DNA of 63,582 nt, the filler included, from Reticulomyxa filosa (taxonomy: Eukaryota; Protista; Foraminifera): assembly GCA_000512085.1 (NCBI GenBank). It is 25 parts of 25 records of this genome, joined end to end, with 100 filler letters (N's around TTAATTAATTAA, not from the genome) between each part and the next. Parts side by side here need not be neighbours in the genome. Positions count along the whole stretch, not along the records: positions 46,629 to 48,210 come from ASPP01023924.1; 24 more parts are not named here. One strand, written 5' to 3'. Below are positions 1,828 to 48,774 of this stretch, one piece after another. The notes below the pieces were generated by a model. The model did no database searches. It was not told the DNA's origin and was given only the letters and a program-made list of their open reading frames with translations. A program made the position numbers and the translations under genes. Numbering within the stretch: position 1 is the stretch's first letter; every line of letters begins with the position of its first letter.

Positions 1828-4039
1828 TTAAACATTTTTATCATCTTTTGTTTTGGATCTTTCTTCATCAACAGTCAGCCCATGTTCTTCAGATGGATTG
1901 ATGTCAGCGACGTACAACGTCGGCACTTCGTGGAACGTAGTAGATTGTCTAGGGTCGATCTCGTGTTGACGTATAGTTTGTGACGAAGAATATTCTTTGT
2001 GATTTGGATTTTCATGGTTGTTTTCATTGTCATTATCTGAACTTTTGGAGTCGTTCTGATCGAGATTCAACGACGGCACTAGTTTGGTCCCAAAGGATTT
2101 GATTTGAAGAGTATCTGTTTGCAGACCTTTTTCAATTTGTGTTTGATTATTGATTTTGACCTCACTCACACTGTTTTCCCGACTTTCAGGAATTCCATTT
2201 AGTTCGCTGACCTGGCCTTGACGCACAAGACGCGACACTCGGGACGTGTTGATTTTTTCTAATGCATCTCCAGTTAAGGCGGAATTTTCTCGGTTTGTCG
2301 ATGGACTGCGTTGATCATTACCAAAAGAGTGCTTTTCGTTGGATTCATTGGCATTTAGTGTCACTTGTTGTTTGTCGGAGTTGTTTCCAAATGCTCGATC
2401 CTGAACAATGGAAGATGGAACAATATGGACATTGAGACTTTCGCTTTGTCCTTCACTTTTGATAATGCTTGTCTCTTTCGGGTATTGCCAATCAAGCGTA
2501 CCAAATGCGCTAACACCACGTCTGTGGAAAGAAGGTACTGATAATGGTCCAAATACCTGAGTAACACTGGTACGAAAATGAGGGGTTATCGGCGTCATAA
2601 ATAACTCGCGTCGTATATTAGAATTGGAGGTATCCAATGATCCCGAGACTTGCCCTTTTGCGGTTCGGTCTTGTTTTTATGTACATCACAAATGATAACA
2701 ACAATGATAAATATTCATTCACAGAAATAAACAAAACATATTTTTTCGTACCTGTGTCGATCATTGTATTGATTAACTCTGGCTGCTGCCGTACTCTCAA
2801 CAGCGAATTTGCGTAACTGCGCAATTTAATCTGGGATGGATTGGGCGGAAATTTTCTTCGAATCCAGCGTATTGGCATTTTACAACAGGTGTATGCGACA
2901 ATTGCGCGCAGAATTGGATGTAACCCGCCGATATACCACGACACGAACATGACATTCCATGGAAAGTCAATGTAACCGACATTGCGCTCGAGCCCGTCCC
3001 GAATTTCCTTCGCACACGCATCTGCTTCCAATGCAAACATCCAACGATAATTGGATGTCAACTTATCCAGCATTGGTGTTTTTACCCATCCTGGATTCAC
3101 GACTGTTACATCCAATCCCAGTCGACGCAAACACCATTCCAAATCTTCTGATAGCAACCTTTCATACAAAAAAAAATCGTATACGAATATAAAGGTACAC
3201 ATAATGTGTACATGTCACAAGTGCAATATTTAAAAAAATAAAAGTAAATATTCCTGTTCCTTTTTTTTCCCTTCTCTTTTTTGCAAGGAAAGACGAACAT
3301 AAAAGAAAAATCATTGAGACACCTAGCAAAAGACTTCGTTGCAGAATATGCGCTTGGAATAGATTGATTTCCGTAGCCAGCGAGACTGGCGATGACAGCA
3401 ATGTGGCCTCTTCCACGTGCTTGGAATCTTGGAATAATGGGGAGCAATGTGTTGATTACTCCCATTGTATTCACTTCAAACAGTTCACTTAATTGTGAAG
3501 CAAAATCTCTTCCCCATTGGGATGCATTAGTTGCGTCCATCCTGTGATAACAGGGACAAAAAATAATAAACATCATGTGTATCCCCTCTATTTTGTTGTC
3601 AATGTTTCAAATAATGTTACCAGCATTGGCAATAATCAAGTCTAATGGCTCTCTATCATCCGCTTCTTGAATAGCATGGATGATCGCTTCTCTGACCCGA
3701 ATGTCACAACGGTATGTTACTACTCTACTCATCCCAGATGTTTTTTTTTCGACATTTATCTGCCACTTGATCCAGTCTTTCTTTGTTGCGTCCGTGCAAA
3801 AACAATGTTACATCTTTTCCTGCAAACTCCATTGCCAATGCAGAACCAATTCCACTACTTGCGCCAGTAATGAAGATTGAATTAAATTTTTTACGTTTGC
3901 ATATCCAACCGCGGCTGATTACGTAATATGTCCACCAAATCGGTGATGTGATCAACACTACCAGGTCACACAACAGACGCAACAACAGCAACAAGAAGAA
4001 CACTCCGCAGTCACGGCACATATAACAGCCACAACACAT
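1828..4039 (-). CDS. Short-chain dehydrogenase/reductase with N-terminal hydrophobic anchor and probable long low-complexity C-terminal tail, multi-exon
   Basis: ITGASSGIG (TGxxxGIG), PLDLIIANAG, GHIAVIASLAG, YSATK (YxxxK), VVNPGWVKT. Apparent 1-nt frameshift in the T-run near 3740-3749. Joining of the 1828..2637 exon is inferred. Confidence 0.82.
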
Positions 4040-4449
4040 AATTTTCTGTTTTGTCAGCGCTGGCTCACGCGCTTGCTTGGTCCTGACAAACAGTGTTACT
4101 ACAAAACATTCATCTCAAAAAAATCTCTTTACTTAAAGCAGAAAGATTGTCTTTGTCATTTTCATTTATATTTTTTTGACAGTTAAAAATGTTAAAATAA
4201 GCTAAAAATATTGCTGTGGGCCAATGTATACTCTTTTCCACAAAATATTTCTTATTTTTGGTACGCGCAAATATGGTGAAAATACTACTTAGAAATCGCT
4301 AAAACTCAGATTTGACATTTTTCTAATAGATCAGAAAAGGTTTAAGCTCTGTTTAGTGTAGGTTTTCAGGAGTGTAGCAAAGACAGCACAGGGGAGTGAC
4401 AAATGCTTTTTTAAAATAACGCAAAATATTTCATTGCAAGATCGAAGAT

Positions 4450-5156
4450 ATGCAGAGTTTCTTGTTGTCTCACAATTTTTCGCGGCAATTTAGCCCTCTA
4501 CAGACACTAAGTAAGCGTTACATGAAAAAAGGAACCGACCAAAACTGACACGAAAACAGCGTAAATCTCGGACAGTAGAAGCTCGAAAATGGTCACAACC
4601 AGCACACTCAAGTAGCAACTACATCCCATTAACTCCTGATGTAACAACTAATCCAATTCCAGCAGCTATGTATCCAATGGCCATCGGCAACAAACAAAAA
4701 AAGGGCAACGCAGAATGGAAGGCCAGTGACAAATTGTTTCGATCATTGAAATTGGAAAATGAGACGTGGTTGGATTGGAAAAATGTAGAAAAAGCGTTGA
4801 ATTTCGATGTACTATTGAAAGAAATTGAATCAAGTATCAACAGTGTATTTGAAACATTTGACAATAATACTGAAATAAATTTAAACGATCCAATTGATAA
4901 ACATAAAGTGTTGTCCAAAATTTGCAAGGAGTTCAATATAGTCATTCCATCTAAGGATTTAAGTGGAATTCAAACCAAAACGGATATTGTTGGATGGATA
5001 TTTAAAAAAGAAAAAGAAAATATGATTAAAAAATGGAGAAGAGAGCGATACATGCCTTATAATTTGCCTGAAAATCTAATTGTCGAACTGCCATGGTATT
5101 ATTGTCTAGGAAAAGAAAGGTCTCCATGGACGCGACCAATGGGAACTAAGGCTTAA
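4450..5156 (+). CDS. Probable mitochondrial ribosomal protein mL50-like
   Basis: The LNDPIDKHKVLSKICKEFNIVIPSKDLSGIQTKTDIV...LPENL pattern resembles the mL50 domain. An R/S/L-rich presequence-like segment from ATG 4450 joins the ORF if the A-run at about 4525-4530 is one base longer. Confidence 0.55.
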
Positions 5157-46628: not shown

Positions 46629-47620
46629 CAAAGAGTTTGAAGATGAACGCGCAAGAGAGAGATAGAGAGTCAATTTTTGTCCAAGTCAAAACTTTATTCA
46701 TTTTGTCCCCGAGCGTTTTACACTTTGGTTCCGGTCCTTTGGTATGATTATGTAATATAAACACAAATCCCCCCCCATACACACTAACCAAGCAATAGTC
46801 CAATTTGAGCCTACATAATGCAATGCTAACGGACTAACAAACACTTCATACAATTTTACTAAACCATACATAAACGGCACATAAATGTTCGACCATTCAT
46901 TTTCCTTCAATTCATACCTTTTTTTTTTTTTTTTTTTGTTTCATTATTTTGTTTCATTTGATTTGTAAAGCCGTTCCAAGGAACACACAGCTCATACAAA
47001 ACATGGTTTTAGAAAGCAAAGTGTGATCCATACAATCGTCTATTGTTTTCTCGTTTGAGAGCTTTCTGATTAGCTGTCATGTTGTCTCCAGTGTTGATTA
47101 TGCATCCGCCCTTTCTTTGGACATTCTGAATTTTGTCATTCTTTTCTTTGATACATTGTGGATCAATGTGCAAGTGAAAAAATTCTATTTTTTTTTTTTT
47201 TTAAAAAGAGAACTTTGGAGTATGGGTCTTCAACAATTGTTTTTTTTTTTTTTCTCCCTCTTCCTCAAACATATTAGTTCTCGTACCTGCCAATGATTGT
47301 TGGCCAAACAATCTTTGTGTCTGATTGTTCAATTGTCCGCAATTTTTAGCTGGAAAGTGCTTCATTATTTGTTTCCAATTTCCACAGCCATATCTTATTA
47401 ATGCAAAACGGAGTGCTTCAGCTTCTTCGTTTGTCCAACCTTTACATTTTTGAAAAAAATACTGCTTCCTTATTGTCATTTGCAACTTCCGTTCCCTTTT
47501 TTTGCTTGTTCTGGGAACATAGACGGAAGTCATAGTAAAACAGATATTACCTGGAGATAACGTGTAATTCCAGAGACTCTTTGAATCAGCAGAACTTTGC
47601 CACAAAGCACGACTTGTCAT
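46629..47620 (-). CDS. Homologue of p1 (AMTP1), the Myb/homeobox-like DNA-binding subunit of the MTA1c/AMT1 DNA 6mA methyltransferase complex, 3' partial
   Basis: Removing introns 47550..47440 and 47286..47185 gives SKSLWNYTLSPGWTNEEAEALRFALIRYGCGNWKQI...GQLNNQTQRLFGQQSLAEFFHLHID...RKGGCIINTGDN, matching the ciliate p1 N-terminal domain as I recall it. Confidence 0.85.
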
Positions 47621-48172
47621 TCTTGTCTTATTGTATGGAGAGATTAAATGTTCACTTTTTTCTTGGATTCGCCCTTGACCCCTTTTACTTTGAAAAGGCA
47701 AGTAATTCCCTGTTTCTGATTCTGTTTGAAATTTAGTATCTTACATATTTTTTGTTATGTAATTAATTTACAAAAGCATCTATTTGCAAGAATAAAAGCA
47801 TAAAAATAAATCTTTCTATCTGAATACGTAAAATAACTTTAAAGACGTTATTAATACAAAAGTATTCAAAAAGATCCGGTTCAAAGACAGGATTTTTTTT
47901 TTGCAAACAACGCCAAGAATCACACCCAATAAACATTAACGAAAGTTGCAAATGGAAAAAGGTAACAGCGTACCGTCATATCAGAAACAAATGGATTAGA
48001 CAAAAAGCGTCAAGGCAAAGACAGATATAAGCAGAGTTGTAAATTCATGAAAACATTGACTAATTTGTAACATAAACAAAAGAAGAGGGGATGGGGAAAA
48101 ATACGACATATCAAAATGTCGAGCCATGAGACACGAATTAAAAAAAAATGTTGGTTTAGTTTTTTTTTTTGG

Positions 48173-48207
<35 letters not shown>

Positions 48208-48774
48208 CCCNNNNNNNNNNNNNNNNNNNNNNNNNNNNNNNNNNNNNNNNNNNNTTAATTAATTAANNNNNNNNNNNNNNNNNNNNNNNNNNNNNNNNNN
48301 NNNNNNNNNNTTTGTTTATTTTTTGTTTTTGTTTATGTGTGCTGCCAGTGTCCGTTGCTGATACCTGAATGTTTCCAAAAAAAAAAAAAAAAAAAGTGTG
48401 GATATACAAAAAAATGTGCGTTTCACGCTTAAATTATTGACACAAAAAAATCTCCAGTATTGGTGAGTCATACAATTTTTAATTTACTTTAGTGTAAATA
48501 TCATACTTTTTTTCACCATGTCTCTCCGCATTTCCGGTAAATGTTTTCAAAAAATACGCACTTTTTTTTTAAGATTTCTCATACGAGCCACTTCTCATTG
48601 ATTTATGTTTTTTATTCTTATTTTAAAAAATTTTATTTTATTTTGGCTTTTTTTAATTATAGGCAAAAAAACGTTTACACTCCAAAATGATGCGTGATTG
48701 TTAGAAAAAGTAAACGAATTTCCAATGGCAATTGTTTTTAAAAAAAGACAAGCTCGTCTAGTAGTATTTTGAAA

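What the first reader, a model, noticed from the sequence alone, without database searches (positions are those of the whole stretch)
46629..47620. p1/AMTP1 homologue: a sign of an MTA1c-type DNA N6-adenine methylation system in a probable foraminiferan
Seen: splicing two GT-AG introns gives a clean domain, SKSLWNYTLSPGW..EE...L..AL...G.G.WK.I...QTQRL.GQQSL.EF..L.ID...RK..CIINTGDN. A third probable intron adds YELKENEWSNIYVP. Known: this motif series matches, from memory, the N-terminal domain of p1 in ciliate MTA1c (MTA1, MTA9, p1, p2), which writes symmetric 6mA at ApT in linker DNA. Inference: the organism may carry the whole complex and ApT 6mA. The ORF track hides the signature because the first intron splits SPG|W, so automated annotation would give only Myb-like. 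I cannot say whether this has been reported for this lineage.
Basis: partly seen in the sequence, partly recalled or inferred. Interest (0 to 1): 0.8.

Follow-up and report, generated by a model that had tools for sequence, protein, structure and literature searches.

The report
Foraminiferal p1/AMTP1 gene for 6mA complex
The piece holds the front half of an intact, intron-split gene for p1/AMTP1, the DNA-clamping subunit of the eukaryotic adenine-methylation (6mA) complex, from a relative of the foraminiferan Reticulomyxa; the reading is correct, but public data already show this pathway in foraminifera.

Summary
On the minus strand, from ATG 47620 to the piece's edge at 46629, lie five exons separated by four GT-AG introns of 111, 102, 116 and 128 nt. 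A fifth intron starts at 46692. Searched one exon at a time, exons 1-3 hit Tetrahymena p1 (PDB 7f4l_E, 7yi8_C, 8xyl_C) in order, at residues 12-24, 24-77 and 78-130. Exon 3 matches nothing else in the PDB. Exons 4-5 align in order with an intronless close relative (P0002), which itself hits p1 at 5e-34 against 5e-4 for the next family. The N-terminal loop SKSLWNYTLSPG and the recognition-helix residues Q67, R68 and Q73 are conserved. Third-codon-position changes dominate against Reticulomyxa filosa, which indicates purifying selection. R. filosa shares all five intron positions. In a tree, exons 2 and 3 each fall with R. filosa inside a clade that holds Elphidium, Bolivina and Nonionella. The presence of the whole AMT1 complex and of ApT 6mA cannot be tested on 1.6 kb. 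It is a reasonable inference: Nat Genet 2025 lists AMT1 and AMT6/7 in R. filosa and reports that p1/p2 co-occur only with AMT1. This is a new member of a known family. No 6mA measurement in foraminifera was found.

The parts
47551..47620 (-). Exon 1. Start codon ATG at 47620-47618. Encodes the N-terminal loop with SKSLWNYTLSP plus the first base of the split Gly codon.
   Evidence: 12 of 12 residues are identical to Tetrahymena p1 residues 13-24. The Met aligns with Met1 of P0001-P0004.
47440..47550 (-). Intron 1: 111 nt, GT..AG, phase 1, in frame and without a stop.
   Evidence: CTCCAG|GTAATATC ... GTAAAG|GTTGGA. p1 and all transcript-derived relatives have an unbroken SPGW. R. filosa has an 81-nt intron at the same place.
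47287..47439 (-). Exon 2: homeobox-like / Myb-like domain with the recognition helix QTQRLFGQQSLA.
   Evidence: PDB p1 residues 24-77, E 8e-9 for the stretch. Pfam PF00249, E 1e-6. 82% identical to R. filosa.
47185..47286 (-). Intron 2: 102 nt, GT..AG, phase 1, with an in-frame stop.
   Evidence: The p1 alignment runs 77 to 78 across this junction. R. filosa has a 78-nt intron at the same place.
47034..47184 (-). Exon 3: the p1-specific extension of the N-terminal region (FFHLHID ... RKGGCIINTGDN ... RR).
   Evidence: p1 chains are the only PDB matches, at residues 78-130, E 6e-8. 71% identical to P0002 and 67% to R. filosa.
46918..47033 (-). Intron 3: 116 nt, donor tt|gtatgg, acceptor preceded by a run of 19 A, phase 2.
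   Evidence: This is the only GT before the in-frame stop at 47011-47009. The split codon TTG gives Leu, matching P0002 residue 125. The R. filosa intron lies one codon away.
46865..46917 (-). Exon 4: YELKENEWSNIYVPFMY plus the first base of a split Gly codon. It is the linker after the N-terminal region.
   Evidence: Aligns to P0002 residues 126-142, 65% identity. R. filosa has the equivalent exon. It corresponds to p1 residues about 128-146 via P0002.
46737..46864 (-). Intron 4: 128 nt, GT..AG, phase 1.
   Evidence: TGTATG|GTTTAGTA ... CCAAAG|GACCGG. R. filosa has the same donor context.
46693..46736 (-). [quoted passage not shown]
   Evidence: Aligns to P0002 residues 144-159. A 21-nt stretch is 95% identical to R. 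filosa L001:4107-4127.
46629..46692 (-). Probable start of intron 5 (donor AAA|GTTTTG). The rest of the gene, including the AMT1-binding helix, lies beyond the piece's edge.
   Evidence: R. filosa has the identical donor context, and its next exon begins AMGLWECLY. Similarity to P0002 stops after the Lys-Val.
47621..48210 (-). Upstream non-coding region (5' UTR and promoter), AT-rich with long homopolymer runs. No other gene, tRNA or Rfam family was found.
   Evidence: Relatives start at the same Met, so no upstream coding exon is expected.

Best explanation
This is the 5' half of an intact nuclear gene for the orthologue of p1 (AMTP1), the non-catalytic DNA-binding subunit of the eukaryotic AMT1/MTA1 N6-adenine DNA methyltransferase complex. 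The organism is a foraminiferan close to, but distinct from, Reticulomyxa filosa. Shown here: the exon-intron structure, family membership by sequence, conservation of functionally tested residues, purifying selection, and placement among foraminifera. Inferred from published work on Tetrahymena: the N-terminal loop (SKSLWNYTLSPG) docks near the AMT1 active site; the homeobox-like domain and its p1-specific extension (exons 2-3) clamp double-stranded DNA against the AMT1-AMT6/7 heterodimer, with helix 3 (QTQRLFGQQSL) lying in the major groove; and a downstream helix-turn-helix-like motif, beyond the piece's edge, ties p1 to the N-terminal helix of AMT1 beside p2. If this holds, the complex would maintain symmetric 6mA at ApT sites downstream of the start sites of transcribed genes.
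For: 1. PDB phmmer of the unspliced 166-aa ORF: the top three hits are Tetrahymena p1 chains (E 1.7e-11). They match in two stretches that abut at p1 residue 24, exactly across intron 1. The next family, c-Myb, scores 3e-5.
2. Exon 3 alone matches only p1 chains in the whole PDB, at residues 78-130, E 6e-8, carrying on from the end of exon 2 at residue 77.
3. The five exon pieces align in order to P0002 at residues 1-23, 25-74, 76-124, 126-142 and 144-159. The four split codons supply residues 24, 75, 125 and 143.
4. P0002 is an intronless 1052-nt contig. It hits p1 at 5e-34 over residues 12-166, against 5e-4 for TRF2.
5. Q67, R68 and Q73, whose Ala mutants lower methyltransferase activity, are conserved, as are K101 and G60. 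So is the N-terminal loop around S15, whose deletion (residues 1-15) lowers activity (for the functions; for the alignment).
6. Differences from R. filosa by codon position are 31, 21 and 67 over 153 codons, with 36 codons changed synonymously only.
7. R. filosa shares all five intron positions.
8. Exons 2 and 3, entered as separate rows, both fall with R. filosa and P0002 (SH-aLRT 96). That group sits inside a clade (SH-aLRT 99) with Elphidium, Bolivina and Nonionella.
9. Literature: p1/p2 co-occur exclusively with AMT1, and R. filosa has AMT1=1 and AMT6/7=1 (PMC12695648). The p1 N-terminal region clamps DNA (PMC12485025). p1 residues 152-183 bind the MTA1 N-terminal helix (PMC9852454).
Against: There is no RNA evidence for this organism. 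No sequencing run was listed, so splicing and expression are inferred from homology only. The AMT1-binding helix-turn-helix motif lies outside the piece, so it cannot be shown that the gene is complete. AMT1, AMT6/7 and p2 of this organism could not be looked for. Some Tetrahymena DNA-contact residues are not conserved: K44, Y63 and M64 are all Asn here, and K114 and K118 are Ala. The 63-64 substitutions are typical of the whole foraminiferal clade, which has N-L there. No 6mA measurement for any rhizarian was found.
Confidence: 0.9

Rival explanations
1. It is a generic Myb/SANT or telomere-repeat-factor-like DNA-binding protein with no link to adenine methylation.
For: Pfam recognises only PF00249 Myb_DNA-binding, on exon 2. 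TRF1, TRF2 and c-Myb chains appear in the PDB list at E 1e-3 to 3e-5.
Against: Those hits cover about 35-50 residues of exon 2 only. Exons 1 and 3 match p1 alone, and the three matches are in order and adjoin at the splice junctions. The full-length relative P0002 separates p1 from TRF2 by 30 orders of magnitude.
Confidence: 0.02
2. It is a true p1-family sequence that is not working as an MTA1c subunit. It could be a silent paralogue or young pseudogene, or an orphan p1 kept after loss of AMT1, perhaps reused as an ordinary DNA-binding factor.
For: No expression data exist. The 3' half was not seen. Reading exon 3 unspliced gives a stop at 47011-47009. Exceptions to co-occurrence exist in the other direction: Trichomonas has AMT1 without p1/p2.
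Against: All five exons are open and all four complete introns have GT-AG ends in consistent phase. The strong third-position excess against R. filosa indicates constraint. Functionally tested residues are kept. p1 is reported to co-occur exclusively with AMT1, and the nearest sequenced relative has AMT1 and AMT6/7.
Confidence: 0.06
3. The piece is not from a foraminiferan. It comes from another eukaryote, or a contaminant, that carries a similar p1.
Against: The nearest named protein is from R. filosa. All five intron positions are shared with R. filosa. Both exon rows sit inside a well-supported clade whose named members are all foraminifera. The low GC (0.33) and homopolymer-rich style resemble the R. 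filosa contig.
Confidence: 0.03

Closest known systems
Tetrahymena thermophila p1 / AMTP1 (PDB 7f4l_E, 7yi8_C, 8xyl_C), a subunit of MTA1c / the AMT1 complex
   Same: The N-terminal loop motif SKSLWNYTLSPG is identical. The homeobox-like domain has QTQRLxGQQSL, with Q67, R68 and Q73 kept. The p1-specific extension has the RKxxCIINTGDN block. The alignment is in order over p1 residues 12-130, and to about 166 via P0002.
   Different: Identity is about 45-50% in the aligned parts. There is a two-residue deletion at p1 residues 52-53. K44, Y63 and M64 are Asn here, and K114 and K118 are Ala. The Tetrahymena protein is 360 aa with a long low-complexity tail. The foraminiferal relatives are 270-390 aa, and the tail of this one was not seen.
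Reticulomyxa filosa RFI_14517 (P0001; contig ASPP01010554.1), annotated as hypothetical / Myb-like domain-containing protein
   Same: It is the orthologue. It is 71% identical over 153 codons, shares five intron positions, and both have A-runs before acceptor sites.
   Different: It is a different species: exon DNA is 70-82% identical and the introns cannot be aligned. The public R. filosa model retains introns 1 and 2 and stops early. Its C-terminal half is called as a separate gene at L001:4291-4730.
p2 / AMTP2 (PDB 7f4l_B), the second homeobox-like subunit of the complex
   Same: It shares the homeobox-like fold family and gives a weak hit (E 0.018) on the exon 2 region.
   Different: It lacks the SKSLWNYTLSPG loop and the CIINTGDN extension. 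In the published structures p2 does not contact DNA. The window protein is clearly p1-type, not p2-type.
Myb/SANT and TRF-type telomere-repeat-binding domains (PF00249)
   Same: Exon 2 carries the three-helix W..EE...L / G.G.W..I signature.
   Different: They have no counterpart of exon 1 or exon 3, score 6-30 orders of magnitude lower, and work in different functional settings.

Membership tests
p1 / AMTP1 (DNA-clamping subunit of the AMT1/MTA1 6mA methyltransferase complex) | N-terminal loop motif (SKSLWNYTLSPG) directly before the homeobox-like domain | tested here: met
   12 of 12 residues are identical to Tetrahymena p1 residues 13-24, and the match abuts the domain match at residue 24 across intron 1. 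The motif is conserved in the family alignment.
p1 / AMTP1 (DNA-clamping subunit of the AMT1/MTA1 6mA methyltransferase complex) | Homeobox-like domain whose helix 3 carries Q67, R68 and Q73 (required for activity in Tetrahymena) | tested here: met
   Exon 2 aligns to p1 residues 24-77, and QTQRLFGQQSL keeps all three residues. Their function is taken from bioRxiv 2025.07.08.663716.
p1 / AMTP1 (DNA-clamping subunit of the AMT1/MTA1 6mA methyltransferase complex) | p1-specific extension of the N-terminal region (p1 residues 78-130, RKxxCIINTGDN block) | tested here: met
   Exon 3 matches only p1 chains in the PDB, E 6e-8, residues 78-130.
p1 / AMTP1 (DNA-clamping subunit of the AMT1/MTA1 6mA methyltransferase complex) | p1 is the best hit, clearly separated from generic Myb proteins | tested here: met
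   For the window ORF, p1 scores 1.7e-11 against c-Myb at 3e-5. For the full-length clade member P0002, p1 scores 5e-34 against TRF2 at 5e-4. Searching with P0002 returns only this family, from taxa reported to hold AMT1.
p1 / AMTP1 (DNA-clamping subunit of the AMT1/MTA1 6mA methyltransferase complex) | Helix-turn-helix-like motif (Tetrahymena residues 152-183) that binds the AMT1 N-terminal helix | not testable with these tools
   It lies beyond the piece's edge; only its approach (exon 5) is present. R. filosa and P0002 continue with a MGLWECLY... helix after the same intron. The HMMER alignment to p1 ends at residue 166.
MTA1c / AMT1 complex present in this organism | An AMT1-clade MT-A70 catalytic subunit (DPPW), an AMT6/7 pseudo-enzyme partner and p2 in the same genome | not testable with these tools
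   Only 1.6 kb of the genome was given. Indirect support: R. filosa has AMT1=1 and AMT6/7=1, and p1/p2 co-occur exclusively with AMT1 (PMC12695648).
MTA1c / AMT1 complex present in this organism | Symmetric 6mA at ApT, enriched downstream of transcription start sites in linker DNA | not testable with these tools
   No reads were available. No rhizarian is in the published Nanopore set. No paper on foraminiferal 6mA was found.
Myb/SANT superfamily (Pfam PF00249) | Match above the Pfam gathering score | tested here: met
   Exon 2 scores 29.1 bits against a cut-off of 24.4, E 1.1e-6, over residues 1-31 only. This is superfamily level; p1 is the specific family.

The most novel reading that the evidence does not exclude
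Intron 1 might be a regulated retained intron. It separates the AMT1-docking N-terminal loop from the DNA-binding domain. It is a multiple of three in length and free of stops in the reading frame both here (111 nt) and in R. filosa (81 nt), although the two sequences are unrelated. Retention would then give a p1 isoform with a 27-37-residue spacer between the loop and the domain, which could tune methyltransferase activity. The expected reading is more mundane: foraminifera, never profiled for 6mA, carry a working ancestral AMT1 pathway with ApT 6mA. I put that at about 0.75.
Probability: 0.05. Interest if true: 0.5.

Novelty: new member of a known kind. Interest (0 to 1): 0.3.

Why it matters
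The piece adds a correctly modelled foraminiferal p1 gene to a family whose public foraminiferal representative (R. filosa RFI_14517) is mis-modelled and unnamed. Foraminifera stand out in the published survey: of the four rhizarians sampled, only the foraminiferan R. filosa has AMT1 and AMT6/7, and 6mA has been measured in none. So Foraminifera are a candidate lineage for extending transcription-linked ApT 6mA to Rhizaria. The pathway's presence is already implied by published tables, so the finding confirms rather than surprises.

Tried and rejected
- The look-up of sequencing runs listed no run. Read laying was therefore not used, and splicing has no RNA support from this organism.
- The exon 4 / intron 4 read-through ORF, searched alone against the PDB, gave only chance hits to SLC22 transporters. 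Its weak ERG4/ERG24 Pfam hit (E 0.029) is also chance. Exon 4 was placed through P0002 and R. filosa instead.
- I considered an unspliced C-terminus for exon 3 (...RRLYGSHFAF, stop at 47011-47009). I rejected it as the main form because relatives continue in order into exons 4 and 5, and R. filosa has the same exons. A minor isoform cannot be excluded.
- All searches were exon by exon by reference, or used the natural unbroken ORF 47204-47701.
- No structure prediction was run.
- The large representative-protein search was not used, because the family scans and the word search had already settled the identity.
- AMT1 and p2 of foraminifera were not searched, because no tool-supplied query sequence for them was available. 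The published table was used instead.

Full report
**What is there**

The piece (46629-48210, GC 0.33) carries one gene, on the minus strand. Translation starts at ATG 47620.

| Part | Coordinates | Notes |
|---|---|---|
| Exon 1 | 47620..47551 | |
| Intron 1 | 47550..47440 | 111 nt |
| Exon 2 | 47439..47287 | |
| Intron 2 | 47286..47185 | 102 nt |
| Exon 3 | 47184..47034 | |
| Intron 3 | 47033..46918 | 116 nt |
| Exon 4 | 46917..46865 | |
| Intron 4 | 46864..46737 | 128 nt |
| Exon 5 | 46736..46693 | |
| Intron 5 (start) | 46692..46629 | donor AAA|GTTTTG; runs to the piece's edge |

All four complete introns have GT-AG ends. The four split codons read GGT, GAA, TTG and GGA, giving G, E, L and G. 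Intron 1 is in frame and has no stop, so the mechanical ORF list shows a single 166-aa ORF (47201..47701) that reads straight through it. The 590 nt upstream of the ATG hold no convincing ORF, no tRNA and no Rfam family.

**Checking the observation**

The third intron and the YELKENEWSNIYVP exon are also real.

**Identity**

Each was searched by reference, and the natural read-through ORF was used where one exists.

- phmmer of the 166-aa ORF against all PDB chains puts three Tetrahymena p1 entries on top (7f4l_E, 8xyl_C, 7yi8_C; E 1.7e-11 to 3.4e-11).
- They match in two stretches: SKSLWNYTLSPG (12 of 12 identical) at p1 residues 13-24, and the domain at residues 24-77. The two stretches meet at residue 24, exactly where intron 1 is removed.
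- Exon 3 alone finds only those p1 chains in the whole PDB, at residues 78-130, E 6e-8, carrying on from exon 2.
- Generic Myb and TRF chains reach at best 3e-5, and only on exon 2. Pfam sees only PF00249 there.

The word-index protein search gave Reticulomyxa filosa RFI_14517 as the best named relative, and an environmental 271-aa protein, P0002, as a full-length intronless relative. The five exon pieces align to P0002 at residues 1-23, 25-74, 76-124, 126-142 and 144-159, so each split codon fills exactly one missing residue. P0002 itself hits p1 at 5e-34 over residues 12-166, against 5e-4 for TRF2. A search with P0002 returned 63 relatives. Those with names come from foraminifera, ciliates, early-diverging fungi, amoebozoans and a cyanidiophyte red alga. 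The published survey lists AMT1 in members of each of these groups.

**Is it functional?**

- The exons are open and the splice sites are canonical and phase-consistent.
- Against the R. filosa orthologue, differences by codon position are 31, 21 and 67 over 153 codons, and 36 codons differ only synonymously. This is the pattern of purifying selection.
- The residues tested in Tetrahymena are kept: Q67, R68 and Q73, whose Ala mutants lower activity (Q73A also lowers 6mA in vivo). K101, G60 and the N-terminal loop around S15 are kept too (functions; alignments).
- K44, Y63 and M64 are Asn here, and K114 and K118 are Ala. The Asn at 63 is shared across the foraminiferal clade and beyond, where residues 63-64 read N-L.

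**Whose gene is it?**

- The R. filosa contig (L001, ASPP01010554.1) has introns at the same five places. One is displaced by a single codon. The donor contexts of introns 1, 2, 4 and 5 are nearly identical.
- Exon DNA is only 70-82% identical and the introns cannot be aligned, so this is another species.
- In a maximum-likelihood tree of 67 rows, exons 2 and 3 were entered as separate rows. Each falls with R. filosa and P0002 (SH-aLRT 96).
- That group sits inside a 30-row clade (SH-aLRT 99) whose other named members are Elphidium margaritaceum, Bolivina argentea and Nonionella stella. 'Probable foraminiferan' is therefore supported.

**How it most likely works** (inferred from published work, not shown here)

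- In Tetrahymena the p1 N-terminal region, which contains the homeobox-like domain, clamps double-stranded DNA against the MTA1-MTA9 heterodimer. Without it, DNA binding is unstable (PMC12485025).
[quoted passage not shown] - The window encodes the first three of these elements in full. The AMT1-binding motif lies past the edge.

**System-level claim**

AMT1, AMT6/7, p2 and 6mA itself cannot be examined on this piece, and no sequencing run was listed. The inference is nevertheless reasonable.

- Romero Charria et al. (Nat Genet 2025, PMC12695648) state that p1 and p2 co-occur exclusively with AMT1. Their table lists R. filosa with AMT1=1 and AMT6/7=1.
- The three other rhizarians they sampled have neither.
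- Wang et al. 2019 (PMC7145601) had already noted AMT1 orthologues in Rhizaria.
- I put the whole-complex-plus-ApT-6mA reading at about 0.75.

**Novelty**

The family, its mechanism and its presence in the nearest sequenced foraminiferan are already in the literature and databases. Transcript-derived p1 homologues of three more foraminifera are public, though unnamed. What is new is modest: one more orthologue, with a correct gene model. No 6mA measurement for any foraminiferan or other rhizarian turned up in the searched library, so the experimental question is open but its answer is predictable.

**Verdict**

The gene is a new member of a known kind. Interest is 0.3.

Noticed in passing
L001:3307-4730 (R. 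filosa contig ASPP01010554.1): The public R. filosa p1 model RFI_14517 appears mis-modelled. It reads through introns 1 and 2 and ends in what is intron 3 here. The C-terminal half (AMGLWECLY...) is called as a separate 111-aa gene at 4291-4730. Exons 4 and 5 (about 3935-3986 and 4080-4121) are in no model.
   Followed up: partly
window 47440-47550 and L001:3377-3457: Intron 1 is a multiple of three in length and stop-free in the exon frame in both species (111 nt and 81 nt), although the sequences are unrelated. Shuffles give stop-free odds of 0.036 and 0.146, each before a further 1/3 for length. Introns 2 are also multiples of three (102 and 78 nt) but contain stops. This may be chance, or tolerated or regulated intron retention.
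   Followed up: partly
window 46918-46937, 47185-47200; L001 about 3905-3930: Acceptor sites are preceded by A-runs, not pyrimidine tracts. Here A19 precedes the AG of intron 3, about A12 plus TAG ends intron 2, and AAAG ends introns 1 and 4. R. filosa intron 3 ends A16-TAG. This may be a general feature of introns in this lineage.
   Followed up: no
window 48177-48207, 46919-46937, 47190-47203, 47241-47253: Homopolymer runs are very long (up to 31 T on the plus strand) in the introns and in the upstream region. The R. filosa contig gave many short A/T-run matches to them by blastn.
   Followed up: no
P0059 (Cyanidiococcus yangmingshanensis), P0030 (Balamuthia mandrillaris), P0066 (Stylonychia lemnae): p1-family proteins appear under unrelated or empty names. 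One red-algal protein is labelled hypothetical, consistent with AMT1=1 in Cyanidioschyzon in the published table. A Balamuthia protein is named 'UBA domain-containing'. A Stylonychia 'glycoside hydrolase family 16' protein matches over about half of the query and is probably a fused gene model.
   Followed up: no
window 46698-46910 (minus strand ORF, 70 aa): This mechanical ORF is exon 4 read on into intron 4. Its weak ERG4/ERG24 (E 0.029) and SLC22 (E 0.6) hits are chance matches to hydrophobic, AT-rich translation.
   Followed up: yes
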